Under the pieces are notes generated by a model. It worked only from the letters and a program-made list of their open reading frames with translations, searched no databases and was not told where the DNA came from. Position numbers and translations under genes: made by a program. Shown piece by piece: positions 41,108 through 61,476 of a stretch of 64,000 nt of DNA; the first letter of the stretch is position 1; every line of letters starts with the position of its first letter. The stretch lies in the IMG/VR virus record IMGVR_UViG_3300012988_000016, positions 244,896-308,895 of that record; one strand, 5' to 3'.

Positions 41108-41767
41108 CTAAGGACGGCGAATAGGAACTGCCGTTCTGGAGACGAGGAAACCACCTTCCACCTCCTCGATCTTCGGTTCGAGTTCAATCCCAACAATGTT
41201 GGGGTCAGACCATTCATCTCCACTGAGCTGAAAATAGGATTTTTGACCATCATTCCCAAAATCGATCGTCTGGCCGGTAGTCTGGAACGGTTCCACCACA
41301 TGGTCCGGCTGATCGGTTTCAATGCACTGAAGCTGAACCGTCTGGTCATGAAGGCGATACAGCTTGCGAGGATCCAGCCAAAAGTGTTGTCGACCATCTG
41401 ACGGATGAAGCCCGATAGAGGTTCCAATCGGGTTACAATCAAGAGTCAATATCCCGACTCCCAGCTGAATCATCTCATGGCGATTCGCTCTGATGGGGCG
41501 GAGCCCCAGATTCAGGTCTCCCATGTGTCCGGAGGTGCGTTCCTCCAACACGATGCACCAGAGGCGAACTCGCTTCCCCTGAAGCTGTCCCAGCCCTTCT
41601 TGATTGAGCCAAAACTCCGCTTTTGCATCCTCATTGAAATTCGAATCACTCAGATTGATGGAACCATATCGCTTGGAGCGTCGTTCACTTGGGTGCCAAG
41701 AGAGGATACCTTCGCCCAATATGGTGTGTAGTAATGATGGCATCAAATCTCTAGTCTTGAAGTCCAC
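41108..41767 (-). CDS. hypothetical protein
   Basis: 219-aa ORF, FWLDPRKLYRLHDQTV. Confidence 0.65.
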   Translation of the reverse strand: MDFKTRDLMPSLLHTILGEGILSWHPSERRSKRYGSINLSDSNFNEDAKAEFWLNQEGLGQLQGKRVRLWCIVLEERTSGHMGDLNLGLRPIRANRHEMIQLGVGILTLDCNPIGTSIGLHPSDGRQHFWLDPRKLYRLHDQTVQLQCIETDQPDHVVEPFQTTGQTIDFGNDGQKSYFQLSGDEWSDPNIVGIELEPKIEEVEGGFLVSRTAVPIRRP

Positions 41768-41946
41768 TGTCCCAACATTCCTAGAAAGAAAAGCAGTAGG
41801 TGGAGTATGGTTTGATCGTAGGTGTGGTGGATTGCCGCCACCGTGGTGAGCAATAGATTTACCCCCATCAACAGTTCGAACAGATAAGGGAGCAGAAACT
41901 GCAATCTGGGCATCTCATCAACCTAACGGCCCATCAGACCAGAAGA

Positions 41947-42189
41947 TTAGAGCTGCTTGGCCTCTTTGGCTTCAATCCTGGCGATCTGTTGGGTCAGATC
42001 ATCGGCCGCTCGTTCATAGGTACGGGCCGTTCGCTCCAACACAGCCGCTTCTTCCAACCAGATGATCCGCTTCATCCGCAGTCTAGTCAATAGATCTGTA
42101 CCTTTGGACATCGCCACTTCAGTCAATCTGGCGTTCAAACTGGAATGTAATCCCGTCGTCAGTGGGCGTTTTTGAGGTTTATCGGTCAT
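41947..42189 (-). CDS. hypothetical coiled-coil protein
   Basis: 80-aa ORF. Confidence 0.55.
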   Translation of the reverse strand: MTDKPQKRPLTTGLHSSLNARLTEVAMSKGTDLLTRLRMKRIIWLEEAAVLERTARTYERAADDLTQQIARIEAKEAKQL

Positions 42190-42453
42190 CCCAATTCCCT
42201 ACGGCTCAACGGCTGGGATGTTTAGGCTTATGAGGCGTATCGCCACAATGCTGGCCAAACAAGGCTCGATCCGCCTGCTCGATAATGTTGAGGGCTCGCC
42301 GGAGATGCCAAGCTGGCGACTGATTGGTCTCCTGTTCGATCTGTCGGCCCAACACCCGACGCAAACTCTCGGTCACTTGCTGGAGCGAATATGCCTTGAG
42401 CATACCTGCTATCCGCCTATCAAGCAACTGTTCGGATCGGTCCCTGGCTTGCA

Positions 42454-43245
42454 TCAATCCTGCCTGGCTGGAGGTGTGGGGGTCGGGTCGACCACCCTTG
42501 GCATCCAATGCGTCACATCGGTCAGGTAATAGTCATCAGTCCAGAAGTTACCGTCACGCCACCATCCCGCATAGGTGACCTCAAGGTTGATGAACCAAAC
42601 CGCCTGACCTGCTTGAGGCATCTCTTTCTGACAGGCTCGCCAAGTTCTAGCCTGAGATCTGAAGACGCCACTATTTAGAGGACTTTCGGCAAAATAGCTG
42701 CCATCCACCCGTTGATAACAATCGCCCAGCACATGCAAGCCATCTTCAATCGAAGTAGGCTGAATGATCGGCCTGCTGTTCCGATAACTGGTTCGCAAGC
42801 TATCCAGGTCAGGCAATATCTTTTCCCAACCTATCTCTAGGCTGGATCGGTAGAGACTAAGCACGTCTTGCAAGGCAGCCTCATATCCCACCATCCGTTC
42901 ATCAGGAGGGAGATCGGCGGGTTGCCCAGCCTTGAGACGCTCCAACCGTTGCTCGGTAACCTTGACGGCTCTCCCAACCAGCGAAATAGAGCGAGCTAGA
43001 CGGACCTGTTCGGCTTTGAGGTGCCGAAGCTGTTGTTCGGTTGCCGAAATGTCTGACGTGGGTTCTATCATTCTAGGCATCCAATGGGTAACTGCAGGGA
43101 TGGGCTGTTTGGATTCCGCATCAGCATAGAAGGCTCCTTGACGCCAGCAACCTGCTTGGCTGATGCCGTAGAAGGTGAGCCAAACCGCCTGGCCTTCTTT
43201 AGGCCGCTGGACCGAGCAAGCGATCCATTGACGATCCTCAGACAT
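42454..43245 (-). CDS. double DUF551-like protein
   Basis: WIAC...P..GQAVW...VTHWMPR occurs at both ends. Confidence 0.75.
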   Translation of the reverse strand: MSEDRQWIACSVQRPKEGQAVWLTFYGISQAGCWRQGAFYADAESKQPIPAVTHWMPRMIEPTSDISATEQQLRHLKAEQVRLARSISLVGRAVKVTEQRLERLKAGQPADLPPDERMVGYEAALQDVLSLYRSSLEIGWEKILPDLDSLRTSYRNSRPIIQPTSIEDGLHVLGDCYQRVDGSYFAESPLNSGVFRSQARTWRACQKEMPQAGQAVWFINLEVTYAGWWRDGNFWTDDYYLTDVTHWMPRVVDPTPTPPARQD

Positions 43246-43526
43246 CAAACCTCTGACATCAAGTCGTCGAACCGGCAATCGGTCCAACGGGTTTGACCTA
43301 ACTCCAACTTGAGAGCCTCATCGATGGTCTCTTTGAACAGGGCTCGCTGCTCAGCAGCTGAATCGGTCGCCTCAAAGGTGGCACGGCTGTAACGATCCCC
43401 ACCACAGAAGCAAGTCATTCCCATGTACTGAGTGATGGTCAGATAGTAGGTACCAACGTCATAACTACATCTGTACAGCCCACCCTTGGGACCAAGCTGC
43501 AAACACGAGACCTCTAGGAGCCGCAT
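43245..43526 (-). CDS. hypothetical protein
   Basis: Class B motif 9 nt upstream. Confidence 0.6.
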   Translation of the reverse strand: MRLLEVSCLQLGPKGGLYRCSYDVGTYYLTITQYMGMTCFCGGDRYSRATFEATDSAAEQRALFKETIDEALKLELGQTRWTDCRFDDLMSEV

Positions 43527-43532
43527 CGCCAG

Positions 43533-43787
43533 CTATACACCAGCTGATTTGCAGCAGTGGTTAGCTGGAACGTGGCTCTGAACCGACACCGTTGCCCGAC
43601 ATGGCTGCAATATCTCAAGCAGAGGCCGTGTCGGGTGGACCTGGTCCCAAATCTGCAGACATTCGGTACAATACTGATGAGGGTAGAAGACGGGCTGATT
43701 GGGCCAAATCACCCTATCGTGAATCCACACATCTTCACACCAAGAACCATCTTTAGTGCCGTCGGTTCGAAGATGATAGGTTGTCAT
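43533..43787 (-). CDS. small Cys/His protein
   Basis: Coupled start MTTYHL. Confidence 0.5.
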   Translation of the reverse strand: MTTYHLRTDGTKDGSWCEDVWIHDRVIWPNQPVFYPHQYCTECLQIWDQVHPTRPLLEILQPCRATVSVQSHVPANHCCKSAGV

Positions 43788-44470
43788 TTCTTCAGTTCCT
43801 CTGCACACCACTCGGCCGCAAACCTCAAAGCAGTCAGGCGATCAGAGCTATTGAAGCCACAAATGACCCTATCTCCCTTGAAGGCACACAAGGTAGGGAT
43901 CCACTCGTCTCCCTCATCCGACCGTTCGACCGAGAAACGCATGGTTCGATAGGTGGTATCGAGATTGTTCCCACCCTGCTGACACCATCGGGTGATCACG
44001 TCCCAACAGTCTGTCTCATCCAGCTCCTGAGCGGATGGCTCAAAATTGTCATCAGAGGGGCCGATGAGTCGAAATTGCTCGACAAGTGTCACCTCCAAGA
44101 CAGTGGTCAGTTGGATTTTAGCTTGTTGAAGGAAGCTGGCGTCTGACGGCCCATACCCTAAACTACAGATCATCCGTATGGGGTTCAACGAGGCCGGTTC
44201 CACCAACAACACTGAAGGGGCAGGTTTGGGGTCATTGGACCAAATCCCTTGAGGAGGCTGGATTTTAAAATGGGCAACCCGCACCCGCCCTGAGGCCGGT
44301 TCGGCTGGCCAACAATTTCCTTTGATGCCCAACCAAGGTAGCCAAAGATTACCTTGATCGTCTTCCCACAGTGTGAACGAACTTCCGTTAGTCGATGACA
44401 ATGCACTGTGCTGTGAGGGCCGGATTTTCATAGATCCAAACTGCTGGCCCAACAGGGGGATGGTTTTCAC
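43784..44470 (-). CDS. hypothetical protein
   Basis: GTG start 9 nt after GGTGTA. Confidence 0.65.
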   Translation of the reverse strand: MKTIPLLGQQFGSMKIRPSQHSALSSTNGSSFTLWEDDQGNLWLPWLGIKGNCWPAEPASGRVRVAHFKIQPPQGIWSNDPKPAPSVLLVEPASLNPIRMICSLGYGPSDASFLQQAKIQLTTVLEVTLVEQFRLIGPSDDNFEPSAQELDETDCWDVITRWCQQGGNNLDTTYRTMRFSVERSDEGDEWIPTLCAFKGDRVICGFNSSDRLTALRFAAEWCAEELKK

Positions 44471-44492
44471 CCTGTTCTTTACACCACCCTGG

Positions 44493-44930
44493 CTAGGGAA
44501 GCCAGCAGGCGATCAACAGATCCAAGTCTTCTCGGCTGAGCATCCTCAACACCTCCGCCTCATAGTCAGGCGTGCGAGGTTCATCACCAACTTCACGATA
44601 GGGGAGGGCTTCAGGTGTGTCGGAATGCTGAGGCCACAGACGACGGCCATATTGCTCATGATGATCGGTCAACAGGTCGCCCGCCAGAGGCCCTGTAGAG
44701 GGTTCGGCTTCCCAGCGGCCTGTCCTCAAAAAGTGTTGTGTGCAGCCGCAAATCCAGCAACAGTAGAGGATTTGATCCCTAGGATCGGGCCAACTCATCC
44801 CCCATTCCTCTAACGCCAAATCGACTAGCTCCAGAAGGGGTAGGTTGTAGTCAACCCTGGCCCATGGACCTTTTTCCAAACACACCATCGTTCGAGTCGG
44901 ATGGTGAAAGACGTAATTGATCACACCCAT
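44493..44930 (-). CDS. hypothetical protein
   Basis: 145-aa ORF. Confidence 0.55.
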   Translation of the reverse strand: MGVINYVFHHPTRTMVCLEKGPWARVDYNLPLLELVDLALEEWGMSWPDPRDQILYCCWICGCTQHFLRTGRWEAEPSTGPLAGDLLTDHHEQYGRRLWPQHSDTPEALPYREVGDEPRTPDYEAEVLRMLSREDLDLLIACWLP

Positions 44931-48236: not shown

Positions 48237-48676
48237 GTCTCCTTTTGGGTCTCGGGAGCGAGCCGGTCAGCCAACTCGATCAAACTGTTGAGCTCCGCAG
48301 CGGTTCGGTGATGGATCGAGTTTTGGCCAAAGACCCTCAACAACCGCTCCACAGCCACACGTCCCTGTCCAATCAGCTGCTGATGCTGCTCACGATCAGC
48401 TTGTTGATACAGCTCTGCTTCAATCTGCTTCTGATCTAGGATCAGCCGCACCTCAGGTGTGTGGTAGTCTACTTTGCCGTACTCGATCATCGTCGCTTTG
48501 ACGAACCGACGCTCCTGCGTGGCAGGATCCCCGTCCACAACAACGAAGATATGCTGCTTGGTCACTCTGGTGACGGTAGCAAGCTTGTGGTCATAGCCAC
48601 GAAACGGTCCGAAACCGTGACGCTTGGCTTGCTGGATGAGTGCTTGTTGGCCTGCCTGAAAGTCTAGTTGGGTCAT
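48233..48676 (-). CDS. hypothetical protein
   Basis: Class A motif at 34 nt. Confidence 0.7.
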   Translation of the reverse strand: MTQLDFQAGQQALIQQAKRHGFGPFRGYDHKLATVTRVTKQHIFVVVDGDPATQERRFVKATMIEYGKVDYHTPEVRLILDQKQIEAELYQQADREQHQQLIGQGRVAVERLLRVFGQNSIHHRTAAELNSLIELADRLAPETQKET

Positions 48677-48985: not shown

Positions 48986-49020
48986 CCAACAATCTACACC
49001 ATCAGACCAAACAAGATACT

Positions 49021-49501: not shown

Positions 49502-50179
49502 CTATCGGGATCCCCCACGGGTCTGATGTGCTGAGCAATAGTGGGTAGGTAGCACCAAATGACCGACCGGCCCACTCAAGTCAGGTTTGGCATGATTCCA
49601 TGGGTCGTCAGGCCGGTCAGGGTCCGGTCCCACCATCACGACAGGAAGGAACGGACTACCAGATCGGGGCCGGCCACACCAACCATACAGCCTCCCCTCA
49701 TGGCCTACCGTCCCCCCATCAGTCCCCATACTGAAATGACGGCACCCACTGCAAAGCTGCGCCTCATCTCTGGCCGGCAACCCCTCCTGGATGCGATCCA
49801 ACCCCCGTTCGATCAGCCCTATGACTTGATACCGCTCAGCTGTCTGACTAAACCGATGTAGGTCCGGCCCCCAATTGGGCAAACCTTCGACCAAATGACC
49901 ATACAACGCCACATACCGGTCATCTAGTTCCGTCCTAGCAGCCGTCACCGCCAACATGCCGCCAATCAGGTTCCACGCCACCGCCTCATGGGAGCGAGGA
50001 TCTATCGCCTTCCCCTCACGGTCGATCGCTCGATTGATACCACTACGCTGTGGATTAGGCATCAAGGTCCAACCACCAATGTTAAATAGCCTCAGCAAAG
50101 CCTTGAGGTCATGGATCAACAACAACCTAACCCCCTCTTGAGGGTCCGGTCTATCAGGATACGACTTAGAAGTCGCCAA
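49502..50179 (-). CDS. DUF6197-like domain fused to a Cys module
   Basis: DLKALLRLF..GW...AVAWNLIGG; CSGCRHF...C...YCSAH. Confidence 0.6.
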   Translation of the reverse strand: MATSKSYPDRPDPQEGVRLLLIHDLKALLRLFNIGGWTLMPNPQRSGINRAIDREGKAIDPRSHEAVAWNLIGGMLAVTAARTELDDRYVALYGHLVEGLPNWGPDLHRFSQTAERYQVIGLIERGLDRIQEGLPARDEAQLCSGCRHFSMGTDGGTVGHEGRLYGWCGRPRSGSPFLPVVMVGPDPDRPDDPWNHAKPDLSGPVGHLVLPTHYCSAHQTRGGSR

Positions 50180-50489
50180 GCCCCATCTCCAACCCCATCA
50201 CCCTTCCAGCCTCCATCCATACAGCCCACCGACGCTTCAACGCCAGCTCGGCCATCCCTATATCCTCCCCCCACCCCTCAAACGTCAGATGGCGGTTACC
50301 CGATTGTACCCACATCTGGAGCTCAACCCTCACCTGGCTGGTCCCAGAATAGTGCCAATTAGGGTAATGGGAGACCATCAGTTTAATAGACCCTTGCCGA
50401 GCCTCATATGTCAACACCTCACGAGCCTGGTTGGGATTCTCCACAGATACCAACGGGAGCTGACGTCCCAAAAATTCAATGGTCTGCAT
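50166..50489 (-). CDS. hypothetical protein, TIxxxGRxL family
   Basis: MQTIEFLGRQL; class B motif. Confidence 0.6.
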   Translation of the reverse strand: MQTIEFLGRQLPLVSVENPNQAREVLTYEARQGSIKLMVSHYPNWHYSGTSQVRVELQMWVQSGNRHLTFEGWGEDIGMAELALKRRWAVWMEAGRVMGLEMGLGDF

Positions 50490-50508
50490 GCGGGTCCTCT
50501 ACACCACC

Positions 50509-50889
50509 CTACTGGAACAACACCCAATAGTAGACCGGCAACAGGTCAGGACCATCATCATGCCGTCGACTCACACACGTCTGTAGGTCATCCCCACACA
50601 TCAGACCGCCACTACACCAATGAACCCCATCCCGACACCAAGATAACCGGTCCACACATGTCAGGTCAGGTGCACACACCCGCCCACCCGTGCACCAATG
50701 CTGCCCGTCAGCACACCATTGGACCGATGTGACGCATTGCTGGCTATCAGGCGTACATACCTTCCCATGCGGACATAGATGCTGACCATCAGCACATGTG
50801 ACGTCCATCACCGGAGGAGGAGGAGGAGTGGGGTCGGCCTGACAAGACAGCAATACCAAACAGATGGCGAAAAGACAACGTTTACTCAT
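50509..50889 (-). CDS. lipoprotein with three Cys-rich repeats
   Basis: LLSC lipobox; CxDGxHxCxxGxxCxxDxxxCV three times. Confidence 0.75.
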   Translation of the reverse strand: MSKRCLFAICLVLLSCQADPTPPPPPVMDVTCADGQHLCPHGKVCTPDSQQCVTSVQWCADGQHWCTGGRVCAPDLTCVDRLSWCRDGVHWCSGGLMCGDDLQTCVSRRHDDGPDLLPVYYWVLFQ

Positions 50890-50959
50890 CTGGATACTCA
50901 AAATCAAACTCCCAAACCGACCAACCTGGCAGGCGAAGCAGGCCCTGTTGGGTGTTCTT

Positions 50960-51230
50960 GATGGTCATTTGCCAAACCCGAAATCGACAAGAAATCCGAA
51001 AATCTCGAAAGACCAATAATAACCAGCATTTAACTCAACAGATGGAAATTAGTCCATATTGCTTGACTATATTGATTCGCAAGAACCGTGCCGAGAGGAG
51101 GATGGTCAAGCAGCCTTGACCATCCTCCTACCAATCGAACCCCCTACCTACGATTTGCCAAAATGATTGCTCGGAAGTGCGGAAATAGAGTGACGCCCAC
51201 ATGACGGTGTGCATCGCTCTATCATGTCTC
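50960..51230. other. AT-rich intergenic region at a GC-skew switch (candidate origin or genome junction)
   Basis: C-rich + strand to the left, G-rich to the right, genes minus-strand on both sides; perfect 15-bp inverted repeat 51096-51110/51115-51129. Confidence 0.5.
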
Positions 51231-51268
51231 TGCCCATGGCTTCGGATCGTCTGGTTGGAGGTGATGGC

Positions 51269-51511
51269 TCAAGATTCGGCCGAATCTACGGTGGTGCCAC
51301 CTTCTTCTTGAGTATATGGTTGAGCATGATCGGGGCAGAACAGTTTCCAATCGAATGCTTGTACCCAACCTTCGGGCAATTCATTGTAGCGTGGGGATAG
51401 GAATGGTTGTTGGAAGAACGGGAAGGTGGGAGCGAGTTCAAGTTTTAGTTGTTCGGTCCTTGGGCAGCCGGGGTGTTGGCACATGGCGGTAGCTAGGATG
51501 TAGAGTTGCAT
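51269..51511 (-). CDS. zinc-finger microprotein (tandem copy 3)
   Basis: CQHPGC...LPEGW...CPDH. Confidence 0.7.
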   Translation of the reverse strand: MQLYILATAMCQHPGCPRTEQLKLELAPTFPFFQQPFLSPRYNELPEGWVQAFDWKLFCPDHAQPYTQEEGGTTVDSAES

Positions 51512-51729
51512 CAGAACTCGCTTCCGTGATCGTATGAGCAATCGGGGCAGGCGATTCGGTGTCCGCCTCGGTAGTCAGGTTGGAGGGTCCAGCCTTGGGG
51601 CAGTTGGGTGGGAGGAAAGCTGAGCAACACTTGGTTGTCCACCAGGGGCTGGCGTTGGAGTTCTACCAGGTGGGCTTGTTGGCGACTGCAACCGACTTCA
51701 CAAGTGATGGTGGTTTGGAGGGTGATCAT
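51511..51729 (-). CDS. zinc-finger microprotein (tandem copy 2)
   Basis: CEVGC...LPQGW...CPDC. Confidence 0.7.
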   Translation of the reverse strand: MITLQTTITCEVGCSRQQAHLVELQRQPLVDNQVLLSFPPTQLPQGWTLQPDYRGGHRIACPDCSYDHGSEF

Positions 51730-51932
51730 GGGAATTCGATCGAATGAGCGGGACACACCACGGTCGAGTGGGCGGCCCAGAGGTTTAGGATCCGTCTCCA
51801 GCCAGGCGGTAGTTTCTTGCCCATGACGGGGCCACTCATCCCCACCACAGGTTCTAGGCCTAGGAGGAAGGGTTCTTCCTTGTTGCAGCCCTGGACTTCA
51901 CAGCAGGCCAAAGCTTGGACGAAGACCGGCAT
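51726..51932 (-). CDS. zinc-finger microprotein (tandem copy 1)
   Basis: CEVQGC...LPPGW...CPAH; class B motif. Confidence 0.7.
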   Translation of the reverse strand: MPVFVQALACCEVQGCNKEEPFLLGLEPVVGMSGPVMGKKLPPGWRRILNLWAAHSTVVCPAHSIEFP

Positions 51933-52003
51933 AGGGTGGTTCTACACCGAGGGATGGTGATGGGCAGGCTTAAGCGGTTGGCAGTTGGGCCGTATGGTCT
52001 GGC

Positions 52004-52303
52004 ATGCCGAACACCAAGCTGGATGAAGCCGAGCAAGCCATGATGGCCCAGATTTTCCAAACCCGTAAGGAAGTGGGTCAGGATGTCGATAAGGCGCTGG
52101 AGCGGTTACGTCCCCAAAACAAGCTGGACTATTTGGTTACCCAAAAGGTCTTGGCGGGCTATACGGCCTATCCGGATAAGGATGGGAACGATACGCTGTG
52201 CCTCCAGTTCCTCAATGGCGACAGTGTGGTGATCCAGGCTACTCCGATCCAAAACGGTTATTCGGCCGGTCTGTTGGTGGACGGTGAAGAGGTGGTGCCT
52301 TAA
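52004..52303 (+). CDS. hypothetical protein
   Basis: Class A variant TTAAGCG-N12-GCCGTATGG at 34 nt. Confidence 0.7.
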   Translation: MPNTKLDEAEQAMMAQIFQTRKEVGQDVDKALERLRPQNKLDYLVTQKVLAGYTAYPDKDGNDTLCLQFLNGDSVVIQATPIQNGYSAGLLVDGEEVVP

Positions 52304-52332
52304 TCTTTCGAGGCTGGGGCCGTTCTATCAGC

Positions 52333-52566
52333 ATGTTCCTCTTGTTGCTGAAGACTGAAAAGAACGCTGGCATCAACCTGAACTTCGTTGGCATGTATCC
52401 CTCCAAGGAGCGGGCCGAGCGACGGGTGGGGCCGGAGTACAAGGAGTTCCAGGAGGCTGGCTTCGGCCGATACCGCATGCTGGGTGGGATGGCCGACATT
52501 GATGCCAAAGCGGTTTGGGAGACCAGCAGCTGGCAAGGAGCCACCTACTTGTTAGCTTGGTACTGA
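52333..52566 (+). CDS. hypothetical protein
   Basis: Class A TTAATCT-N12-GCCGTTCTA at 33 nt. Confidence 0.7.
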   Translation: MFLLLLKTEKNAGINLNFVGMYPSKERAERRVGPEYKEFQEAGFGRYRMLGGMADIDAKAVWETSSWQGATYLLAWY

Positions 52567-52605
52567 TAGGCCCTTAACTCTTCAGAAGGACAGCCGTTTA
52601 TATCA

Positions 52606-52757
52606 ATGAAGCGGCTGGTTCGGTTCCCCCACGGGGCTAGCCCAGACGGAGAAGGGACGGCTTCGGGGAGATCCGGTCTGGGGACCTTTTGGAGGATGGA
52701 TTCCCCCGTCCCCGTGGGTCAGAAGGGCGGGCTTGCCGTGACGGCTGAGCGCCCTGT
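52606..52757 (-). ncRNA. candidate structured ncRNA between convergent class A motifs
   Basis: Minus motif 52764-52791 has no ATG at +1; four stems; G-U wobble favours the minus strand. Confidence 0.55.
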
Positions 52758-52952
52758 TGATGATAGAACGGCCATGGTGGGGAGAAGTTAAGGCTCACCA
52801 CAGCTTCGGTAATTTTCGAATCCCCCGGTCGATCGCCAACGCTAGGCAGATCACCACATTGTTGACCAGCTCTTCCATCCTAGCATCGAGGCGGGCCAGG
52901 ATCCCTTTGGGCTTTTGAGGCATCGGTCCTCAGCTTAGCCCAAAGGGGCCTA

Positions 52953-53189
52953 TCAAGCAATTGGTTTGGGTTTGGATGACCGCTTACGGTCTTGTCGCAA
53001 GATCTCTCGTTCGATGATTCTGGCCAGAAGGTTTCGTTCCGAACCATTGAGGTTGTGGCACGTACTGGCAGCCAGTACGGCGTATTCGGTCACTGTGATG
53101 GGGGTCGACTTGTTCATGGTAGGATGCTGGGGACAGGGGCTATTGAGTACCAGGATACTCAATAGCCCGCATTTGGGGCAACGATTCAT
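52953..53189 (-). CDS. hypothetical protein
   Basis: CPKC; coupled. Confidence 0.55.
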   Translation of the reverse strand: MNRCPKCGLLSILVLNSPCPQHPTMNKSTPITVTEYAVLAASTCHNLNGSERNLLARIIEREILRQDRKRSSKPKPIA

Positions 53190-53443
53190 GCGGTGATGTA
53201 AGCGTTGGCTGGCAGCCGGCGATCCAATAGTTGGCGGGCCAGGCTGTATTGAGTGCCCTCAGGGGTGAGGGTCCCAAGGCTGCCGTACTGATGGTCTTCA
53301 TTGCCATGTCGGGCTGTGAACTCGCCCGTGCGGCTACAACAGTAGAGGTCCTTGCCATCCAGGCGGCCGAGGAAGCGGCATTCATCGCAGTCGTGCTGGT
53401 ATAGGGGGCGGACCATTCGAGCAACCAACTTGGCGGTCTTCAT
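53186..53443 (-). CDS. conserved phage Cys/His protein
   Basis: HDCDECRFLG...DLYCC...ARHG; class A motif 53453-53480. Confidence 0.7.
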   Translation of the reverse strand: MKTAKLVARMVRPLYQHDCDECRFLGRLDGKDLYCCSRTGEFTARHGNEDHQYGSLGTLTPEGTQYSLARQLLDRRLPANAYITA

Positions 53444-53488
53444 GATGCATGATAGAACGGAAGTCGGTTTTGGAACTTAAGGGACAGG

Positions 53489-53680
53489 ATGACGGTTGAT
53501 CAGATCCTAGCAGGGTGGCGGAACGGGACGCTAAATAGGGCGGAGCTTATTAGCGGTTTGGCTCAGCTGGAGGTGCCCTTGGAAGAGCTCTACTTGCCGG
53601 AAGGCATGGCGGCCGATGTGGAGCGGTTGAGGGCCGCTATCGGGCGGGGAGAGGCCTTCACGGTAGAGGCCAAGGCTTAG
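53489..53680 (+). CDS. hypothetical protein
   Basis: 63-aa ORF filling the gap. Confidence 0.5.
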   Translation: MTVDQILAGWRNGTLNRAELISGLAQLEVPLEELYLPEGMAADVERLRAAIGRGEAFTVEAKA

Positions 53681-53871
53681 TCGTTATTGACGGTCAGCGC
53701 CGAATTGGTGACCCACACTGCTGTTCCGAAATGGGTCACCTTATCGTAATCCGACAGGTCTCGGCCCAACCCTTCCTTGAAGTACTCTTCGAGCATCTGA
53801 GGTTCCAGCTCAGGAGTGGTGACCAACACTTCAGTACCGTCAGAGTAGCTGATCAGGGTGAGGGTTGGCAT
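53677..53871 (-). CDS. hypothetical protein
   Basis: Class B motif 9 nt upstream. Confidence 0.65.
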   Translation of the reverse strand: MPTLTLISYSDGTEVLVTTPELEPQMLEEYFKEGLGRDLSDYDKVTHFGTAVWVTNSALTVNND

Positions 53872-53874
53872 CCC

Positions 53875-54315
53875 TCACTTTACACCGATGACGGTCCCAC
53901 ACCACATGAATTCCTGCATGTTGGGGACCTTTTTGGCCAAGGCTTGGATCAAGCTGACCACACGGCCGTAGGTCATTGCATCTTGTAGATGACGGACACC
54001 GACCGGCTGTTGCTTGATCGTGTAGTAGAGGTCATCGTAGAACACTACTTCGACGACCCTGGTTTGGCCGCTGTAGCACCATACTTGTGCGATCTGGCGG
54101 GGTTCTTGATCGGTTGGCCCGTGGACCCAATCATCCTGATTGAGGATCCCTTCAGCCGTCTCTTGGATCAGTTTGAGTGAGTAGCGTGTGGCTTTTAGCG
54201 GCTCTCTGCTGCCAGGGCAACCGAAACCATCAGCTCCGATGTGGTTGCAGATCTTACCCCCATAGATGTGTTGATCAGTCTTGCAGACGGGACAGGTGAC
54301 TAGGTGGCGTTCCAT
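53875..54315 (-). CDS. hypothetical protein with N-terminal zinc finger
   Basis: CPVC...H...CPGS; start MERHLV. Confidence 0.6.
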   Translation of the reverse strand: MERHLVTCPVCKTDQHIYGGKICNHIGADGFGCPGSREPLKATRYSLKLIQETAEGILNQDDWVHGPTDQEPRQIAQVWCYSGQTRVVEVVFYDDLYYTIKQQPVGVRHLQDAMTYGRVVSLIQALAKKVPNMQEFMWCGTVIGVK

Positions 54316-54317
54316 GT

Positions 54318-54614
54318 TCAGACTCCGTAGACCTTGCAATTGAGGTCTTTCCAGTCTTGACCCACCTGACCGTCCAGCCATTCGTTGTACTGCCGGCGGG
54401 CCACTTGGGCGCACTCCTGGTACAGCTCTGTGGTCATGCCGACGGGGTTGCTCAACAGGTGGATACGGGTCTCACCATCAATGAAGTCGGCCGCGTAGCG
54501 GAGCAGTTGGCGGCCCAGCATCACCTCAACCACACAAGGAGCTCCAGAGCCGTCTGGATAGGGCTTGCCTGAGTTGGTGGAGCATTTGAGGCTGTTAGGG
54601 GTGGGCTGGTTCAT
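54318..54614 (-). CDS. hypothetical protein
   Basis: Class A motif (54621-54648) at 34 nt. Confidence 0.7.
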   Translation of the reverse strand: MNQPTPNSLKCSTNSGKPYPDGSGAPCVVEVMLGRQLLRYAADFIDGETRIHLLSNPVGMTTELYQECAQVARRQYNEWLDGQVGQDWKDLNCKVYGV

Positions 54615-54661
54615 GTCTGATGGAACGGAAGCCAGGTGGGGAAGTTAAGGCTTCCCCACCC

Positions 54662-54895
54662 TCAGGGTTCGTTCTTGCCCAAACAAATCATCAAGCGAGT
54701 TCGGGTCTCGACGGAAGGTTCGGGAAAGGGTCTGGATTCCGATCGAGTGACGATCAGCTCTGGGCAGGCACCTTGCTGGTTACCCTGTACCGGCATTTGG
54801 GCCAACTGTCCGACCAGTAGGGCGATCAAGTCGGTCGCCTCTTGTCGGGTCAGGACCAGGACATCAAAGTTGGTTTGGGGGATTTGTCTGGCCAT
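54662..54895 (-). CDS. hypothetical protein
   Basis: Probable start MARQIP. Confidence 0.5.
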   Translation of the reverse strand: MARQIPQTNFDVLVLTRQEATDLIALLVGQLAQMPVQGNQQGACPELIVTRSESRPFPEPSVETRTRLMICLGKNEP

Positions 54896-55041
54896 GATCA
54901 GGCTTCTCGGGCGCTTCCTTTGGACCATCAGGGAGATCGATGAACCAATTCTTTTCGCAGAGGATTGAGCAGTAGCCGCCAATAGCATCAATGAGGCGGC
55001 CGCAGCCTTGGCAATTCGTTGGTGTGGAATACATGGTGTTC

Positions 55042-55320
55042 CTAGGTACTGTGGAGGAAATCGGTGCAGTCTCTGGCTGTTTGGAGGATTTTTTCTTTGA
55101 GAGCGGCCTCAGCCTTGGTCAACGTACCGGCGCAGAGGGTGAGGAAGGTCTTGTTGATCGTCACTGAGATCTGCCAGAAGTCTCCGCCGTCGGGTGGGGT
55201 CTGGTGTTGCACTTGGATGTGAGGCTTGCCCTGCTGTTCAGCGTTACTGTAGTGTTCCTTGTAGCCAGGCACAGCGTGTAGGGTTTGGCCTAAGACTTGA
55301 ATGGTGGAGGGGGTATCCAT
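55042..55320 (-). CDS. hypothetical protein, TIxxxGRxL family
   Basis: TIQVLGQTL...PHIQV. Confidence 0.65.
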   Translation of the reverse strand: MDTPSTIQVLGQTLHAVPGYKEHYSNAEQQGKPHIQVQHQTPPDGGDFWQISVTINKTFLTLCAGTLTKAEAALKEKILQTARDCTDFLHST

Positions 55321-55322
55321 GG

Positions 55323-55523
55323 TCAGATCTTGGTAGCCTGTTGGCGGCTCCAGTAGCAGACCCTACACCCACAGGGACGGCGAGCCATGAAGGCAGCTTT
55401 GAACTGTTCCTGTACGGCTGGAATGTCGACCACCAGCAGCTTGGCGACCCGCTTGGAGTGACGGGCTAGGATCTGGGCATTCATGCGGAGGGCTTCCGCC
55501 TCGTGAACCTGTAGGGTGATCAT
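55323..55523 (-). CDS. hypothetical protein
   Basis: Class A motif (55530-55557) at 34 nt. Confidence 0.7.
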   Translation of the reverse strand: MITLQVHEAEALRMNAQILARHSKRVAKLLVVDIPAVQEQFKAAFMARRPCGCRVCYWSRQQATKI

Positions 55524-55553
55524 GATTGATGGAACGGAACCTAGGACGGGAAG

Positions 55554-55793
55554 TTAAGCTCCAACCACGCAATAGAGCGTGCCTGGATTGAGGCGTTCGA
55601 GCTCTAGGCGACGAGCATTCGCCTCAGCGGTTTGCTCAGCCGTGAAGGCGTTTAGGCGGTATTCTGCTGAGGTGAATCGGGCTCGACTAACCGATCCATC
55701 CTTGTTGAGGCGTTTGACCAACAGGGTCTTGGTTGAGACCATATCGGTCCAATGTTTGGCCTGTAAGGCTCGGAAGGCGGCGGTGGGTTTCAT
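55554..55793 (-). CDS. hypothetical protein
   Basis: 79-aa ORF behind a structured leader. Confidence 0.65.
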   Translation of the reverse strand: MKPTAAFRALQAKHWTDMVSTKTLLVKRLNKDGSVSRARFTSAEYRLNAFTAEQTAEANARRLELERLNPGTLYCVVGA

Positions 55794-56054: not shown

Positions 56055-57059
56055 ATGCATCACGAGAAATTGCTCGAAGCGTGGTTGGCTGGATACGGGG
56101 GAGCCACCCTCATAGCGTACAGACCGGTCGCCCAATCGTTCCTAACTCAGGTCCCTCTTGAGATGCCGGCCATCCAGGCATGGGCCGAATCGCTCACAGG
56201 AAGTCCCTCAACAAGAGCGAGGAAGGTCTCGACCATTGTCAGCCTATTGACCTTCGCCCACAAGCACAGATACGTTGAAGAGAACTTGGGACTGTCTTTG
56301 AACCGTCCCAAGCAGACACCCAAGAAAGTCGTCCCTGTCGACACAAGCCTGATCCAGGATCTGGTTGGCGCTGCCAACGGGGAGCGGGACCGCCTCTTGA
56401 TTCGAGTGCTCTATGAGACCGGCAAATCCCCAGAGGCCGTCACCAAGCTTCGGTTCAAGGACTTGGATCAGGTCTCTGACGGATTGAAAGCTAGCCTGCT
56501 TGAGTTCCAAAAGGACGCCAGCCCTGAGCGGCTTGTGTTCCTATCATTTCGAAACCAAAAGCTTTCTGCCAGAGATGCCAGACGTATGGTACAGCGTGCT
56601 GCAACGGAAGCCGGCTTGGATGAGTTGGGGACGGCCTGGCTTCGCAAGGCCCATCACTGGAAAGACCCGAAACCAGTCCGAGCTTGGAATATTCGACAGG
56701 CTGCCTCGGGGCCGTTCGGAATCATCTACGGTCTGAGGGACCCAAGAACCAACGATCTCTGCTACGTCGGTATGACCCGTCTAAAGCTCCAAGAGCGGCT
56801 GAGGTGTCATCTGTCGAAGGCCAACCTAAAGACCCGTAATCGGGCTTCTGGATGGCTTCGGGGCCTCCTTGCAGACGGGGTTCGCCCTGTGGCTGAAGTG
56901 TTGGCAGTCGCCAAGGATCGGGACGAGCTGCTCTACCTGGAACGCTATCACATCAGCCAAGCCCGCTCGGAGGGACATCCGCTGGTCAACAGTACGCACG
57001 TCTGGAGCCTGAGGAAGATTCAAAAGAGGCTCAGAGGCGACATGAGTCGCTGGGCTTGA
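56055..57059 (+). CDS. degenerate tyrosine recombinase fused to a GIY-YIG-like endonuclease domain
   Basis: Core-binding domain; RDRLLIRVLYETGKS; WLRKAH; then IIYGLRDP...YVGMT...R...H...E. Confidence 0.75.
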   Translation: MHHEKLLEAWLAGYGGATLIAYRPVAQSFLTQVPLEMPAIQAWAESLTGSPSTRARKVSTIVSLLTFAHKHRYVEENLGLSLNRPKQTPKKVVPVDTSLIQDLVGAANGERDRLLIRVLYETGKSPEAVTKLRFKDLDQVSDGLKASLLEFQKDASPERLVFLSFRNQKLSARDARRMVQRAATEAGLDELGTAWLRKAHHWKDPKPVRAWNIRQAASGPFGIIYGLRDPRTNDLCYVGMTRLKLQERLRCHLSKANLKTRNRASGWLRGLLADGVRPVAEVLAVAKDRDELLYLERYHISQARSEGHPLVNSTHVWSLRKIQKRLRGDMSRWA

Positions 57060-58337: not shown

Positions 58338-58373
58338 TCAATCAAGGGCAACGGAGTCATGACCCACAGCCCC

Positions 58374-58465
58374 CAGTCGAATAGTTGGCCGGTTGCCAGC
58401 ATCTGATCCAATAACTCAGAATCGGGCGAGACGTCGCCCCAGGGGTTCAACTCCCCCTCGACGGT
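58374..58465 (+). tRNA. atypical tRNA-like gene (8/4 fold, long variable arm, 9-nt anticodon loop; identity undetermined)
   Basis: D-stem GTTGGC/GCCAGC, anticodon stem TCTGA/TCAGA, V-arm GGGCGA/TCGCCC, T-arm GGGG-TTCAACT-CCCC, acceptor 6/8 paired. Confidence 0.6.
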
Positions 58466-58538
58466 TTGCGGCTAGTTCAACAGGAAGAGCGACCCTTGTT
58501 AAAAGGGAGAGAAGTGGGTTCGAGGCCCACGCCGTGAG
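58466..58538 (+). tRNA. atypical tRNA-like gene (anticodon loop GTTAA, Asn-like)
   Basis: Acceptor TTGCGGC/GCCGTGA, TA, D GTTC/GAGC, CCCTT-GTTAA-AAGGG, T GTGGG-TTCGAGG-CCCAC. Confidence 0.7.
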
Positions 58539-58541
58539 CAA

Positions 58542-59437: not shown

Positions 59438-59509
59438 GATACTTTGGTGTACTGGTGCACACACCCGATAAGGGTGGAGAGTTGGGTTCGAATCCCAGCA
59501 AGTATCCCA
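59438..59509 (+). tRNA. atypical tRNA-like gene (anticodon loop GATAA, Ile-like)
   Basis: Acceptor GATACTT/AAGTATC then CCA; D GTGT/GCAC; CACCC-GATAA-GGGTG; T GTTGGG-TTCGAAT-CCCAGC. Confidence 0.75.
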
Positions 59510-59714: not shown

Positions 59715-59937
59715 ACAACTATCGGCGGCCGACTGGCCTGGCTCCCCATAGCGAAGCTACGGGCCGGCCCACCAGCCGCCGCTAAATGACCGTCTGGCCG
59801 AACCGATCGATAATCCGTTCGGGCTGTACAGATCTCCCAAAATGGCGTATCCAGTATGCGCCCCGCTCAAAACGGCAAATAGGTCAAATCCCCCTATCTA
59901 TCCAAATTTTTATCGACCGGCCATTTTTGGCTCGATC

Positions 59938-59975
59938 AAAAAATCCGCATGGCTTCGCCGGGCGGCGGATTTTTT
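59938..59975. terminator. bidirectional terminator-like hairpin
   Basis: AAAAAATCCGC...GCGGATTTTTT. Confidence 0.55.
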
Positions 59976-59992
59976 CTGGGCCCGCATTTTCC

Positions 59993-60157
59993 ATGAAACC
60001 TGATCCCAAACAGCTGATTGCTAAGGTTGAGGCCGATCTAGAGAGGGAACGGATGCGGTTCGCCCTATTGACCAAACAGCATCTGGCCAAGGTAGCGAGG
60101 CTGAAGAAGCGGATGGTTCGACTGCAAGAGCAATCTGGTCAAGAGTGGTGGCGTTGA
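59993..60157 (+). CDS. small coiled-coil protein
   Basis: Probable start MKPDPK. Confidence 0.5.
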   Translation: MKPDPKQLIAKVEADLERERMRFALLTKQHLAKVARLKKRMVRLQEQSGQEWWR

Positions 60158-60169
60158 CGCTCGATACTG

Positions 60170-60554
60170 TCAGCCAAATGCTGGGTCGAGCCGTCGCAAC
60201 AGTCCCAACATCCAGTCGATGAAGGACTGTTGCGATAGCCCTTTGAGGGCGATCCGTTCCCCGAATCTGGTACATTCGAGCCATCGGTTATCGTCAGAGA
60301 GGGTCAGGTTCAGCTGCAGGTCTCCCTCGGGGATGGGGATCGGCACATACGTTAGCTCGATCGCTCGTGGGTAGCTGCCTAGGATTTGGAGCCGCACTCC
60401 TTTGGCTGATAGGACCTAACGACTCAGCGATCTGCAGGACGGCCGGCCCCACTAGGTCGAACAGCATTCCTTCTGCCTGTGCTTGTTGATCGGAGCGAGC
60501 CTTCAGATACGCTTCACGCCCTTGGAGGAATTGGGCAACGGCTTTAAGGGACAT
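60170..60554 (-). pseudogene. possibly frameshifted gene (ORFs 60294-60554 and 60170-60397)
   Basis: Start at the palindromic class B site; a one-base shift near 60415 would join ...LQIAES to VLSAKGVRLQILG... Confidence 0.4.
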
Positions 60555-60593
60555 ACGGCCAATACACCAATTCTGGTGTATTGGCCGTATGTC
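60550..60593. promoter_or_regulatory. perfect 20-bp inverted repeat holding two divergent class B motifs and both start codons
   Basis: GACATACGGCCAATACACCA-attc-TGGTGTATTGGCCGTATGTC. Confidence 0.85.
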
Positions 60594-60810
60594 TACCAAA
60601 TACCTGTTGAGCCTCATACTGCTGCTTCAGGCATGTGGTGGCCGTGTTGACGGTGGGCCCGACCAGCCTTTCCAAACCCCTGGACCTACATCTATCTGTC
60701 GCGAAGGTGAGTTGCCCATCACATTGGAGCGTCTGACGCCTCAGCTCCGTGAAGAGTTGGAGGGGTGTAGGATGTTGGACCCGACCAAGTGGTGTTGTCC
60801 AACGGTGTAG
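60589..60810 (+). CDS. small Cys-rich lipoprotein
   Basis: LQAC lipobox followed by GG; ends WCCP. Confidence 0.7.
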   Translation: MSTKYLLSLILLLQACGGRVDGGPDQPFQTPGPTSICREGELPITLERLTPQLREELEGCRMLDPTKWCCPTV

Positions 60811-60818
60811 ACCCATCC

Positions 60819-61142
60819 ATGAAACCCACCACTACAGTTGCGATCGGTCTAGCCACCCTACTGGATGCGTTCCATTGTCTCGACACACGGGTGGAGGCGG
60901 TCTGGATCCATCCTGCCCACATGCCAGAGCTCAGAACTGACCCTGAGTACGACCCGATCGCCCAGATGTCGGTCATCCAACAAGTCAGTCAAGCTGGTGG
61001 AGGCAGGTTTGAAGGCTTGCTGTGGGGAGTCCGGATCCTAAGTTCCGAGTTGGTGCCTATGGGGCGAGCCTGTGTCTTGCTGGCAGGCTTTGAGGCCAGG
61101 TTGGTGTCGGGTGAGGGGTCGGTGCCTTTCATGATCCAATGA
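60819..61142 (+). CDS. stand-alone protein resembling a major-capsid-protein subdomain
   Basis: DAF...RVEAVWIHP...LR...GLLWGVRILSSELVPMGRACV; class B motif. Confidence 0.5.
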   Translation: MKPTTTVAIGLATLLDAFHCLDTRVEAVWIHPAHMPELRTDPEYDPIAQMSVIQQVSQAGGGRFEGLLWGVRILSSELVPMGRACVLLAGFEARLVSGEGSVPFMIQ

Positions 61143-61476
61143 ACTGGCGTAGCCTGATAGCTGCCAGTCGTCTTGACATCCAGGGTTCATTCACGAAACT
61201 GTATCGGCCGTCCATCAGTGTTATGGAGGCGATCATTTTAGATGTCCCATTGGGGTTCAGTTGCAGGATCTCAAACACGAACTGCCCATGCCAGCTACGG
61301 CTCGTTAGTAGACATCTCACGTTACGTAGTCCCGCCAGCTTGACCAAGCCGTCAATTTGCTGGATGGCTGTTGCCAACCATTCGTCTAGGAAACGTTCTT
61401 GGAATTGCTCGAACGTAAGCTCCCCAGAACGTATCTGATCATAGACCCTCCTAGCGTTCTTCGACTTGCGGGGCAT
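61129..61476 (-). CDS. hypothetical protein
   Basis: AAGGA RBS; 115 aa. Confidence 0.55.
   Translation of the reverse strand: MPRKSKNARRVYDQIRSGELTFEQFQERFLDEWLATAIQQIDGLVKLAGLRNVRCLLTSRSWHGQFVFEILQLNPNGTSKMIASITLMDGRYSFVNEPWMSRRLAAIRLRQFIGS

What the first reader, a model, noticed from the sequence alone, without database searches (positions are those of the whole stretch)
49900..52300. Abrupt GC-skew inversion at an AT-rich gap: candidate origin or genome junction
Seen by hand counts on the + strand: 50161-50220 C28/G6 and 50581-50640 C27/G7, versus 51541-51600 C14/G26 and 51601-51660 C11/G25. Genes are minus-strand on both sides, so coding bias does not explain it. The gap (about 50960-51230) has an AT-rich stretch, clustered GAAA(T) repeats (50980-51010) and a perfect 15-bp hairpin. 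Known: C-rich to G-rich transitions mark bidirectional origins. Joined genome termini are an alternative.
Basis: partly seen in the sequence, partly recalled or inferred. Interest (0 to 1): 0.6.

Follow-up and report, generated by a model that had tools for sequence, protein, structure and literature searches.

The report
Likely replication origin of a megaphage
A 376-base AT-rich gap between same-direction genes in an uncultured ~475-kb soil phage is where the base bias of the two DNA strands flips most sharply, most likely marking where the phage starts copying its DNA in both directions.

Summary
The skew step at window 50.8-51.25 kb is the largest in the 386 kb of this genome I could read. 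Genes on both sides are on the minus strand, shown by a strain variant and by public gene calls.

Genome-wide skew comes from codon position 1, so it follows gene direction. Around the gap the flip also appears at synonymous sites, strand-wise. The minus strand is G+T-rich over 49502-50892. The plus strand is G+T-rich over 51269-55793. These flanks are the two genome-wide extremes.

The gap (50893-51268) holds the most AT-rich 60-120 bp stretch of the known sequence, a perfect 15-bp hairpin and short repeats. Contigs from four soil metagenomes cross it unbroken.

A 485-kb relative, LR745208.1, has the same layout with non-homologous flanking genes. Homologous genes take the bias of their position, which argues against import of skewed modules.

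Best reading: a bidirectional replication origin (about 0.58). Joined termini are unsupported. Nothing is experimental, about 19% of the ~475.5-kb genome was not read, and no initiator gene or iteron array was found. It is a new member of a known kind: skew-defined origins of huge phages.

The parts
49502..50892 (-). Left flank: three minus-strand genes (49502-50179, 50166-50489, 50509-50892) whose coding (minus) strand is unusually G+T-rich at synonymous sites.
   Evidence: Four-fold sites are G .41 and C .17, against .27 and .31 genome-wide. NNY C-share is .35 and NNR G-share is .80. Two of the three are the most G-ending genes of the genome, z 3.9 and 3.4. The frame of 50166-50489 is confirmed by the strain variant.
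50893..51268 (.). Intergenic gap of 376 bp where the strand bias changes sign. Proposed origin core.
   Evidence: The cumulative GC-skew minimum is at 51151 and the keto minimum at 51163. The gap is 100% identical in the strain variant. Contigs of 4 runs cross it.
50958..51077 (.). The most AT-rich stretch of the known genome: 65% AT over 120 bp, 70% over 60 bp at about 51014-51075. Proposed DNA-unwinding element.
   Evidence: Ranks first at 60, 80 and 120 bp in 309 kb and in 386 kb.
50974..51012 (.). Cluster of CGAAA/GAAAT units (T-tracts on the minus strand) spaced 8-10 bp apart.
   Evidence: Sequence. One of about 5 clusters of 3 or more CGAAA/TTTCG within 32 bp in 309 kb.
50967..50976 (+). 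ATTTGCCAAA, first of two direct copies that bracket the AT-rich stretch and the hairpin. The second copy is at 51153-51162.
   Evidence: Only 3 exact copies exist in 309 kb, and 2 of them are in the gap.
51096..51129 (.). Perfect 15-bp inverted repeat with a 4-nt loop. There is no T/U run after it on either strand. Its arms carry GATGGTCA, which also occurs at 50960.
   Evidence: Not called as an intrinsic terminator.
51153..51162 (+). Second copy of ATTTGCCAAA, at the exact skew minimum.
51185..51222 (.). Second, imperfect inverted repeat (16-nt arms, 81% complementary).
   Evidence: The region 51060-51270 folds with z -3.97 as minus-strand RNA.
51269..55793 (.). Right flank: 12 minus-strand and 3 plus-strand small genes in which the plus strand is G+T-rich at synonymous sites whatever the gene direction.
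   Evidence: Minus genes have C .48 and G .18. Plus genes have G .41 and A .07. The within-block plus-versus-minus contrast is delta keto +0.135, z 5.3. The 3-kb scan gives z +6.6, the genome maximum. Frames are confirmed for 51511-51732, 53186-53443 and 53489-53680.

Best explanation
The gap at 50893-51268 is the origin, or the core of an initiation zone, for bidirectional replication of a ~475.5-kb soil megaphage.

Proposed mechanism. The AT-rich stretch (about 50958-51077) melts, possibly helped by proteins bound to the flanking short repeats and the inverted repeat. Two forks then leave in opposite directions. To the right the parental plus strand is the one left single-stranded (lagging-strand template or displaced strand). 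To the left it is the parental minus strand. Single-stranded DNA suffers more C-to-T and A-to-G change, so those strands become G+T-rich over time.

The bias is about ten times stronger within 2 kb to the left and 4.6 kb to the right than elsewhere. My explanation is that only origin-proximal DNA is always copied in the same direction. Farther out, forks that start by recombination may arrive from either side and blur the polarity. The phage encodes a UvsX-like recombinase, which fits this.

Shown: the strand-wise flip independent of gene direction, the AT-rich extreme, the repeats, the contiguity of the gap, and conservation of the layout in a relative.

Inferred: that replication starts here, the deamination mechanism, and the reason for the local amplitude.
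For: (1) This is the largest skew step of the known genome at 1, 2 and 5 kb.

(2) Genome-wide skew sits in codon position 1. Four-fold sites are about -0.07 in the coding strand on both strands. In the flanks, four-fold skew is +0.42 on the left and -0.45 on the right for genes of the same direction.

(3) All eight four-fold codon families and the two-fold families shift the same way, and plus-strand genes in the right flank shift the opposite way in coding terms. The bias therefore belongs to the strand, not to the gene.

(4) After correcting for gene direction, the two flanks are the two genome-wide extremes: z +6.6 and -4.3 against a genome SD of 1.43.

(5) The sign change falls within about 150 bp of the most AT-rich 60-120 bp of 386 kb.

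(6) The polarity matches large-scale gene divergence away from the 51-56 kb region. It also matches a weak genome-scale contrast between plus and minus genes: +0.045, +0.029, +0.051 and +0.014 to the right of the gap around to about 172 kb, and -0.010 from 172 to 294 kb.

(7) LR745208.1 (485 kb) shares 105 proteins, with the head protein at 82.6% identity. Its largest skew step (+0.379 at 2 kb, near 42.6 kb) also lies between same-direction genes, next to a top-ranked AT-rich gap with a 20-bp perfect hairpin. Its flanking genes are not homologous to ours.

(8) Three LR genes inside that flank have four-fold G/(G+C) of 0.22-0.30. Their homologues in our phage, far from our gap, have 0.41-0.50. 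Composition follows position.

(9) A UvsX-like recombinase is present.
Against: There is no replication data of any kind. Only assembled contigs were available, not raw reads.

No initiator gene was found next to the gap or elsewhere in the known 81%. There is no DnaA-box cluster and no clear iteron array, only two- and three-copy short repeats.

The bias ends abruptly at gene borders (49502 and 55793) rather than decaying smoothly. That is also what mosaic modules would give.

The implied replication arms are very unequal, about 124 kb against about 351 kb, if the weak sign change near 172 kb is the terminus.

About 89 kb of the circle was not read.

The more distant relative Tunturi_5 has no such flip. 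LR745208.1 also has a second AT-rich plus hairpin site at its overall skew minimum, so the picture in relatives is not simple.
Confidence: 0.58

Rival explanations
1. Mosaic junction. Two gene modules with different histories and different codon habits happen to abut at an ordinary regulatory gap, which holds a transcript-end hairpin for the upstream operon and an AT-rich promoter region for the downstream one. No replication starts here.
For: The bias has sharp borders at gene boundaries. The whole 49-62 kb region has raised GC, 0.54-0.57 against 0.527. The region is a hot spot of strain-level patchwork and replacement. All tested flank genes are ORFans. The hairpin lies 140 bp behind the stop of 51269-51514, and one weak promoter-like match follows it.
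Against: Plus and minus genes inside the right block carry opposite coding-strand bias, so the bias belongs to the strand. Two opposite extremes would have to meet exactly at the genome's most AT-rich spot. The same layout occurs in LR745208.1 with unrelated genes, and there composition follows position rather than gene family. No donor is seen among 5.8 billion proteins.
Confidence: 0.17
2. Transcription-driven bias. Very strong divergent transcription or R-loops start in the gap, leftward through 50892-49502 and rightward, antisense, through 51269-55793. This leaves the non-template strand single-stranded and G+T-rich, without being an origin.
For: The left flank fits: its coding strand is G+T-rich, as expected for heavily transcribed genes. 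The sharp borders would match transcript ends. AT-rich, T-tract-phased DNA is typical upstream of strong promoters.
Against: The same gene direction with opposite bias rules out transcription of the annotated genes as the common cause. The right flank would need a 4.5-kb antisense transcript across 12 genes. No rightward promoter-like site and no copy of the phage's own gene-start motif GGTGTA lies in the gap. No RNA runs hold this phage.
Confidence: 0.1
3. Joined physical ends. The gap is the cos, pac or terminal-repeat junction of a linear virion genome, joined in the assembly.
For: Assemblies of terminally redundant or cohesive-end genomes read through the junction, so contiguity does not exclude it. 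Strand displacement starting from the ends would give the same polarity and a local bias.
Against: Contigs of 4 runs from 4 studies cross the gap, and all 4 P0001-carrying contigs shown (of 8 on record) have at least 10 kb on both sides. The contig ends that could be placed lie elsewhere. There is no repeat of the contig ends. The large terminase gene is about 172 kb away. The gap is identical in the variant strain and shows no length heterogeneity.
Confidence: 0.07
4. A replication terminus rather than an origin, which would hold if the leading strand of this phage's polymerase were C-rich.
For: The sign convention (leading strand G-rich) is taken from bacteria and is not proven for this phage.
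Against: Genes on the large scale point away from the region. The site is the most AT-rich stretch, which suits melting rather than fork fusion.
Confidence: 0.03

Closest known systems
Skew-defined origins of huge phages (Al-Shayeb et al. 2020, PMC7162821; method in Chen et al. 2020, PMC7111523)
   Same: This is a metagenome-assembled phage of hundreds of kb in which a C-rich to G-rich switch in an intergenic region is read as a bidirectional origin. About 30% of such genomes are reported to show this. The closest complete relative, LR745208.1, is an uncultured metagenome-assembled phage of similar size (485 kb); that its LR74 accession places it in the Al-Shayeb data set is my guess, not checked.
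   Different: Here the whole-genome curve mainly follows gene direction. The independent signal is a strong, local flip (2 kb and 4.6 kb) at synonymous sites between same-direction genes. That analysis is not part of the published descriptions I read.
Bacterial oriC (my own knowledge)
   Same: Cumulative skew minimum, an AT-rich unwinding element, and genes pointing away from the site.
   Different: No DnaA-box cluster, no dnaA or dnaN nearby, and the skew amplitude is local rather than constant along the arms.
Phage T4 origins followed by recombination-dependent replication (my own knowledge)
   Same: A large myovirus-type phage with a UvsX-like recombinase. Origin firing early, then recombination-primed forks, would explain why polarity is consistent only near the origin.
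   Different: T4 origins are promoter plus R-loop elements defined by experiment. T4 skew is reported to follow transcription. No sequence similarity was tested or found.
Strand-displacement gradients in vertebrate mitochondrial DNA (my own knowledge)
   Same: C-to-T and A-to-G type enrichment (a G+T-rich exposed strand) at synonymous sites, scaling with exposure as single strand.
   Different: A different replicon, a one-sided gradient over the whole genome, and experimentally supported.
Intrinsic transcription terminator
   Same: A GC-containing perfect hairpin 140 bp behind a stop codon.
   Different: No U-run on either strand, and not called by the scan.

Membership tests
Replication origin inferred from strand composition | Sign change of GC (and keto) skew with C-rich to G-rich polarity on the plus strand | tested here: met
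Replication origin inferred from strand composition | The switch is not explained by gene direction or protein composition | tested here: met
   Genes of the same direction lie on both sides. The flip is present at four-fold and two-fold synonymous sites and is strand-wise.
Replication origin inferred from strand composition | Global minimum of cumulative skew on the complete replicon | tested here: inconclusive
   On the contig chain the gap is the start of the long rising arc. About 89 kb of the ~475.5-kb circle was not read, and the curve mostly reflects gene direction.
Replication origin inferred from strand composition | AT-rich unwinding element at the switch | tested here: met
   It is the most AT-rich 60-120 bp of 386 kb. 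This is compositional only. Melting was not modelled.
Replication origin inferred from strand composition | Repeated initiator-binding sites (iterons or boxes) | tested here: inconclusive
   ATTTGCCAAA occurs twice (of 3 copies in 309 kb), GATGGTCA three times, and there is a CGAAA cluster. No array is present and no known protein binds them.
Replication origin inferred from strand composition | Initiator or replication genes adjacent | tested here: not met
   Flank genes are ORFans without family matches. PolA is at genome 101 kb and the UvrD-like helicase at 42 kb.
Replication origin inferred from strand composition | Replication actually starts there (depth maximum, intermediates) | not testable with these tools
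   Only Logan contigs were available, giving one depth figure per contig.
DnaA-dependent oriC | Cluster of DnaA boxes | tested here: not met
   There are 13 one-mismatch matches in 64 kb against 12.3 expected, and none lies in the gap.
Physical genome terminus (cos, pac or terminal repeat) | Assemblies break at the site, or reads start or stop there | tested here: not met
   Contigs of 4 runs cross the gap, and no joints or loose ends occur there. Read starts themselves could not be tested.
Physical genome terminus (cos, pac or terminal repeat) | Location next to the terminase genes | tested here: not met
   The terL homologue lies in the G001 extension, about 172 kb from the gap.
Intrinsic terminator | Stable hairpin followed by a U-run | tested here: not met
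   The hairpin is present, but there is no T-run on either strand.

The most novel reading that the evidence does not exclude
The roughly tenfold local amplification of strand bias, conserved in two megaphages of about 480 kb, may record a persistent single-stranded initiation zone of several kb on each side. That would be a divergent D-loop or R-loop type bubble, or repeated abortive initiation, comparable to the mitochondrial D-loop. As far as I know, such a mode of origin function has not been described for tailed phages.
Probability: 0.15. Interest if true: 0.7.

Novelty: new member of a known kind. Interest (0 to 1): 0.45.

Why it matters
Megaphages near 500 kb are almost all uncultured, and how they start replication is unknown. 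This site gives a precise, testable origin candidate of 376 bp, with a defined AT-rich core, a hairpin and short repeats.

It also shows how to separate replication-type bias from gene-direction bias in phage genomes, where raw cumulative skew mostly follows transcription direction. The steps are to use synonymous sites, contrast plus and minus genes within a region, and compare homologues that sit at different positions.

If the local amplitude reflects origin-proximal polarity followed by recombination-driven replication, sequence alone would reveal the replication strategy of uncultured giant phages.

Tried and rejected
- **DNA and protein searches for relatives of the locus.** No DNA match in the phage collection. 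No relatives of two flank proteins in viral contigs. No other viral contig carries the hairpin.
- **Function of flank proteins.** PHROGs, Pfam and the ESM Atlas gave nothing usable.
- **Known RNA families.** Rfam found only the tRNAs at 58-59 kb.
- **DnaA boxes.** At chance level.
- **Tandem repeats.** None in the gap.
- **Promoter and terminator scan.** At chance level, with one weak minus-strand promoter-like site at 51094-51066.
- **Terminal repeats or a circular overlap of the contig.** None found. The contig is incomplete, not circular by itself.
- **Assumption that G001 bridges the contig ends.** Wrong. It extends 67.6 kb into sequence absent from the contig.
- **My first gene caller.** It preferred plus-strand ORFs at 51559-51747 and 53231-53404. 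I rejected these because the strain variant puts stops in them.
- **Translational selection as the cause.** Highly expressed-looking genes here are C- and T-ending, whereas the right-flank minus genes are C-rich and T-poor.
- **Depth differences among the small X4 contigs (3 to 6).** Too weak and confounded by strain mixture to use.
- **Tunturi_5 as a third example.** It has no comparable flip.
- **Searching the 285-kb JGI record directly.** That record is not held.
Full report
**What the window is**

The window is the last 64 kb of a 308,895-bp virus contig from a soil metagenome. The contig is not the whole genome.

- A 142-kb contig that is 100% identical over the shared part runs 67.6 kb beyond the contig's first base, into sequence the contig lacks.
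- A 285-kb JGI contig carries both the last gene of the window and a gene near the far end of that extension. Its coordinates put 98.9 kb between them.
- The chain closes to a circle of about 475.5 kb. This agrees with a 475,623-bp contig on record for proteins of this locus.
- I could read 386 kb of it, about 81%.

The major head protein (genome 6317-7198) is 82.6% identical to that of the uncultured 485-kb phage LR745208.1, 46.7% to Tunturiibacter phage Tunturi_5 and 37.6% to Bacillus phage G. This is therefore a soil megaphage of that wider group. The standard genetic code was used throughout.

**The observation**

- The skew goes from -0.236 (50001-51000) to +0.168 (51001-52000).
- The step is the largest anywhere in the known 386 kb at 1, 2 and 5 kb (0.44, 0.38, 0.24; more than 5 SD).
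- The fine-scale cumulative minimum is at 51151 for GC skew and 51163 for keto skew.
- The gene-free gap is 50893-51268.
- The 15-bp perfect hairpin is at 51096-51129.
- The GAAA(T) cluster is real but only modestly unusual.
- The gap contains the most AT-rich 60-, 80- and 120-bp stretches of the whole known sequence.
- The decamer ATTTGCCAAA occurs three times in 309 kb. Two of those copies bracket the AT-rich stretch and the hairpin.

**Gene direction**

My own codon-based caller was ambiguous just right of the gap, so I used a strain variant recovered from other assemblies (L035, L037). It differs from the window only in patches.

- Minus-strand ORFs 50166-50489, 51511-51732 and 53186-53443 stay open through 11, 34 and 42 substitutions, with mostly conservative amino-acid changes.
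- The competing plus-strand ORFs acquire one to three stops.
- Public gene calls on four contigs agree.
- The three ORFs at 51269-51932 overlap start-to-stop and share a C-x-GC ... LPxGW ... CPxxH pattern.

The right flank also contains three plus-strand genes, and the large-scale switch to plus-strand genes comes only at 55793/56055.

**What kind of bias it is**

Genome-wide, skew comes from codon position 1 (+0.17 to +0.28 in the coding strand). Four-fold sites are slightly C-rich in the coding strand of both plus and minus genes. The whole-genome cumulative curve therefore mostly traces gene direction, and by itself it would not show an origin.

The flanks of the gap are different.

- **Left flank.** In the three genes at 49502-50892, four-fold sites are G .41 and C .17. 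Pyrimidine-ending two-fold codons shift to T and purine-ending ones to G.
- **Right flank, minus genes.** In the twelve minus genes at 51269-55793, the values are C .48 and G .18, with shifts to C and A.
- **Right flank, plus genes.** The three plus genes in that block shift the other way in coding terms (G .41, A .07).
- All eight four-fold families move together.

The bias therefore belongs to the DNA strand. The minus strand is G+T-rich on the left and the plus strand is G+T-rich on the right. It is not translational selection, since genes with the strongest codon bias here are C- and T-ending. It cannot come from transcription of the annotated genes, because they point the same way on both sides.

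After correcting for gene direction, the two flanks are the two most extreme 3-kb stretches of the genome (z +6.6 and -4.3; genome SD 1.43). The bias stops abruptly at 49502 and 55793.

**Genome scale**

Contrasting plus and minus genes within regions gives a weak strand-wise component with the same polarity:

| Region | Plus-strand keto excess |
|---|---|
| Right of the right flank (300.8-318 kb) | +0.045 |
| 67.6-kb extension | +0.029 |
| 0-130 kb | +0.051 |
| 130-172 kb | +0.014 |
| 172-294 kb | -0.010 |
| Right flank itself | +0.135 |

Each is only 2-3 standard errors, and the long arm is nearly all one gene direction, so I treat this as supportive but weak. If real, the two arms would be about 351 kb and 124 kb.

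**Assembly and ends**

Contigs from four soil runs of four studies cover the gap without a break. They are a 42-kb contig, a 9.4-kb contig and a 155-kb contig of a variant at about 98% identity, and a 419-bp contig at 50886-51304. The four P0001-carrying contigs shown, of eight on record, have at least 10 kb on each side of the locus.

The gap is identical in the variant. The large terminase gene is about 172 kb away. This rules out a misassembly. It gives no support to joined termini, although only raw reads could exclude cohesive or redundant ends.

**Relatives**

I read the whole of LR745208.1. It shares 105 proteins with long syntenic runs.

- Its largest skew step at every scale (+0.379 at 2 kb) is at 42.3-42.6 kb.
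- All genes from 33 to 54 kb are on the minus strand, including long, high-scoring ORFs.
- The direction-corrected synonymous bias is negative for about 20 genes on the left and positive for about 14 on the right. The step of +0.232 is the largest in that genome.
- Between the two sides lies a 574-bp gap that holds one of the most AT-rich stretches of that genome, a 20-bp perfect hairpin (one of only six with stems of 13 bp or more in 485 kb) and TCGTTTC repeats.
- The flanking genes are unrelated to ours.
- Three LR genes inside its right flank have four-fold G/(G+C) of 0.22-0.30. Their homologues in our phage, far from our gap, have 0.41-0.50. The composition follows the place, not the gene family.

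This is the strongest argument against import of already-skewed modules. In LR the bias decays over tens of kb rather than stopping sharply. LR also has a second AT-rich plus hairpin site next to its overall cumulative minimum near 435 kb. The more distant Tunturi_5 shows no single sharp flip, so the feature is not general to the wider group.

**Interpretation**

The polarity, the independence from gene direction, the AT-rich extreme, the large-scale divergence of genes and the conserved layout fit a bidirectional replication origin best.

The G+T-rich strand is the one expected to be single-stranded more often behind each fork. The combined shift (less C and A, more G and T) resembles deamination-type bias known from other replicons. 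This comparison rests on my own knowledge, not on a test here.

The strong local amplitude needs an extra assumption. I favour consistent fork direction only near the origin, with recombination-primed forks blurring polarity elsewhere. A UvsX-like recombinase is encoded.

A less ordinary alternative is a persistent single-stranded initiation bubble.

Against the origin reading: there are no replication data, no initiator gene, no DnaA boxes, only weak repeats, sharp borders of the bias, and unequal arms.

**Comparison with the literature**

Skew-based origin calls in huge phages are established practice. About 30% of such genomes are reported to show bidirectional patterns (PMC7162821; PMC7111523). 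This finding is therefore a new member of a known kind, with an unusually clean separation from gene-direction effects.

**Flank genes**

All tested flank proteins are ORFans, seen only in this phage and its variant among 5.8 billion proteins, within the sensitivity limits of that search. The exhaustive profile search, structure prediction and complex prediction were not used, because they would not bear on the question.

Noticed in passing
whole genome; e.g. window 48990-48995, 50495-50500, 51938-51943 (minus strand), 58954, 60764, 63411 (plus strand): The motif GGTGTA is strongly enriched upstream of genes: 49 of 174 upstream regions against 6.6 expected. Of its 107 intergenic copies, 54 lie 10-20 nt before a same-strand start codon. 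It could be a gene-start signal, either a promoter for leaderless messages or an unusual ribosome-binding signal. No copy lies in the gap.
   Followed up: partly
window 60550-60593 and genome 240120-240159 (just left of the window): The two longest perfect hairpins of the contig (20 and 18 bp stems) both contain CAATACACC / GGTGTATTG, which includes the gene-start motif in both orientations.
   Followed up: no
window 51269-51932 (minus strand) and 50885-50968 (minus strand): Three tandem small genes with overlapping start and stop codons share a C-x-GC ... LPxGW ... CPxxH pattern at about 29% identity. A 27-codon ORF inside the gap carries the PGW piece and may be a remnant copy.
   Followed up: partly
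window 50509-50892 (minus strand): A predicted secreted or lipoprotein-like, cysteine-rich repeat protein with a faint Granulin match. Its (GGA)5 proline-coding run at 50813-50828 is 3 nt shorter in the contigs of three runs, an in-frame length variant.
   Followed up: no
window 56055-57059 (plus strand); paralogue at genome 243467-244333: A 334-aa protein with a phage-integrase-like N-terminal part and a GIY-YIG nuclease domain sits at the point where gene direction switches. A 38%-identical paralogue lies just left of the window.
   Followed up: no
window 48620-48672, 50427-50448, 51595-51669, 53000-54300, 53680-53941, 59936-61502: The variant strain is identical except for dense patches, for example 34 changes within 75 bp. 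It also has replaced segments: 260 bp swapped for 84 bp, removing the 64-aa gene 53677-53871, and about 1.6 kb replaced at 59.9-61.5 kb. This looks like a recombination mosaic rather than even divergence.
   Followed up: partly
window 58373-58539 and 59438-59509: A tRNA-Leu(TAA) lies next to a weak tRNA-like match. A second tRNA-like gene is called with an odd anticodon (ATA, 'Tyr').
   Followed up: no
whole genome (G000 plus G001 extension plus L039-L045): The record is about 65% of a circular map of about 475.5 kb. Large terminase and UvsX-like recombinase genes lie in the 67.6-kb extension beyond the contig start. PolA is at genome 101390-104197 and a UvrD-like helicase at 41687-44878.
   Followed up: yes
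LR745208.1 435.4-435.8 kb (L054): The relative has a second site that combines a top-ranked AT-rich stretch, a 15-bp perfect hairpin and its overall cumulative skew minimum (434,960). It may be a second origin-like site or a gene-direction switch.
   Followed up: no
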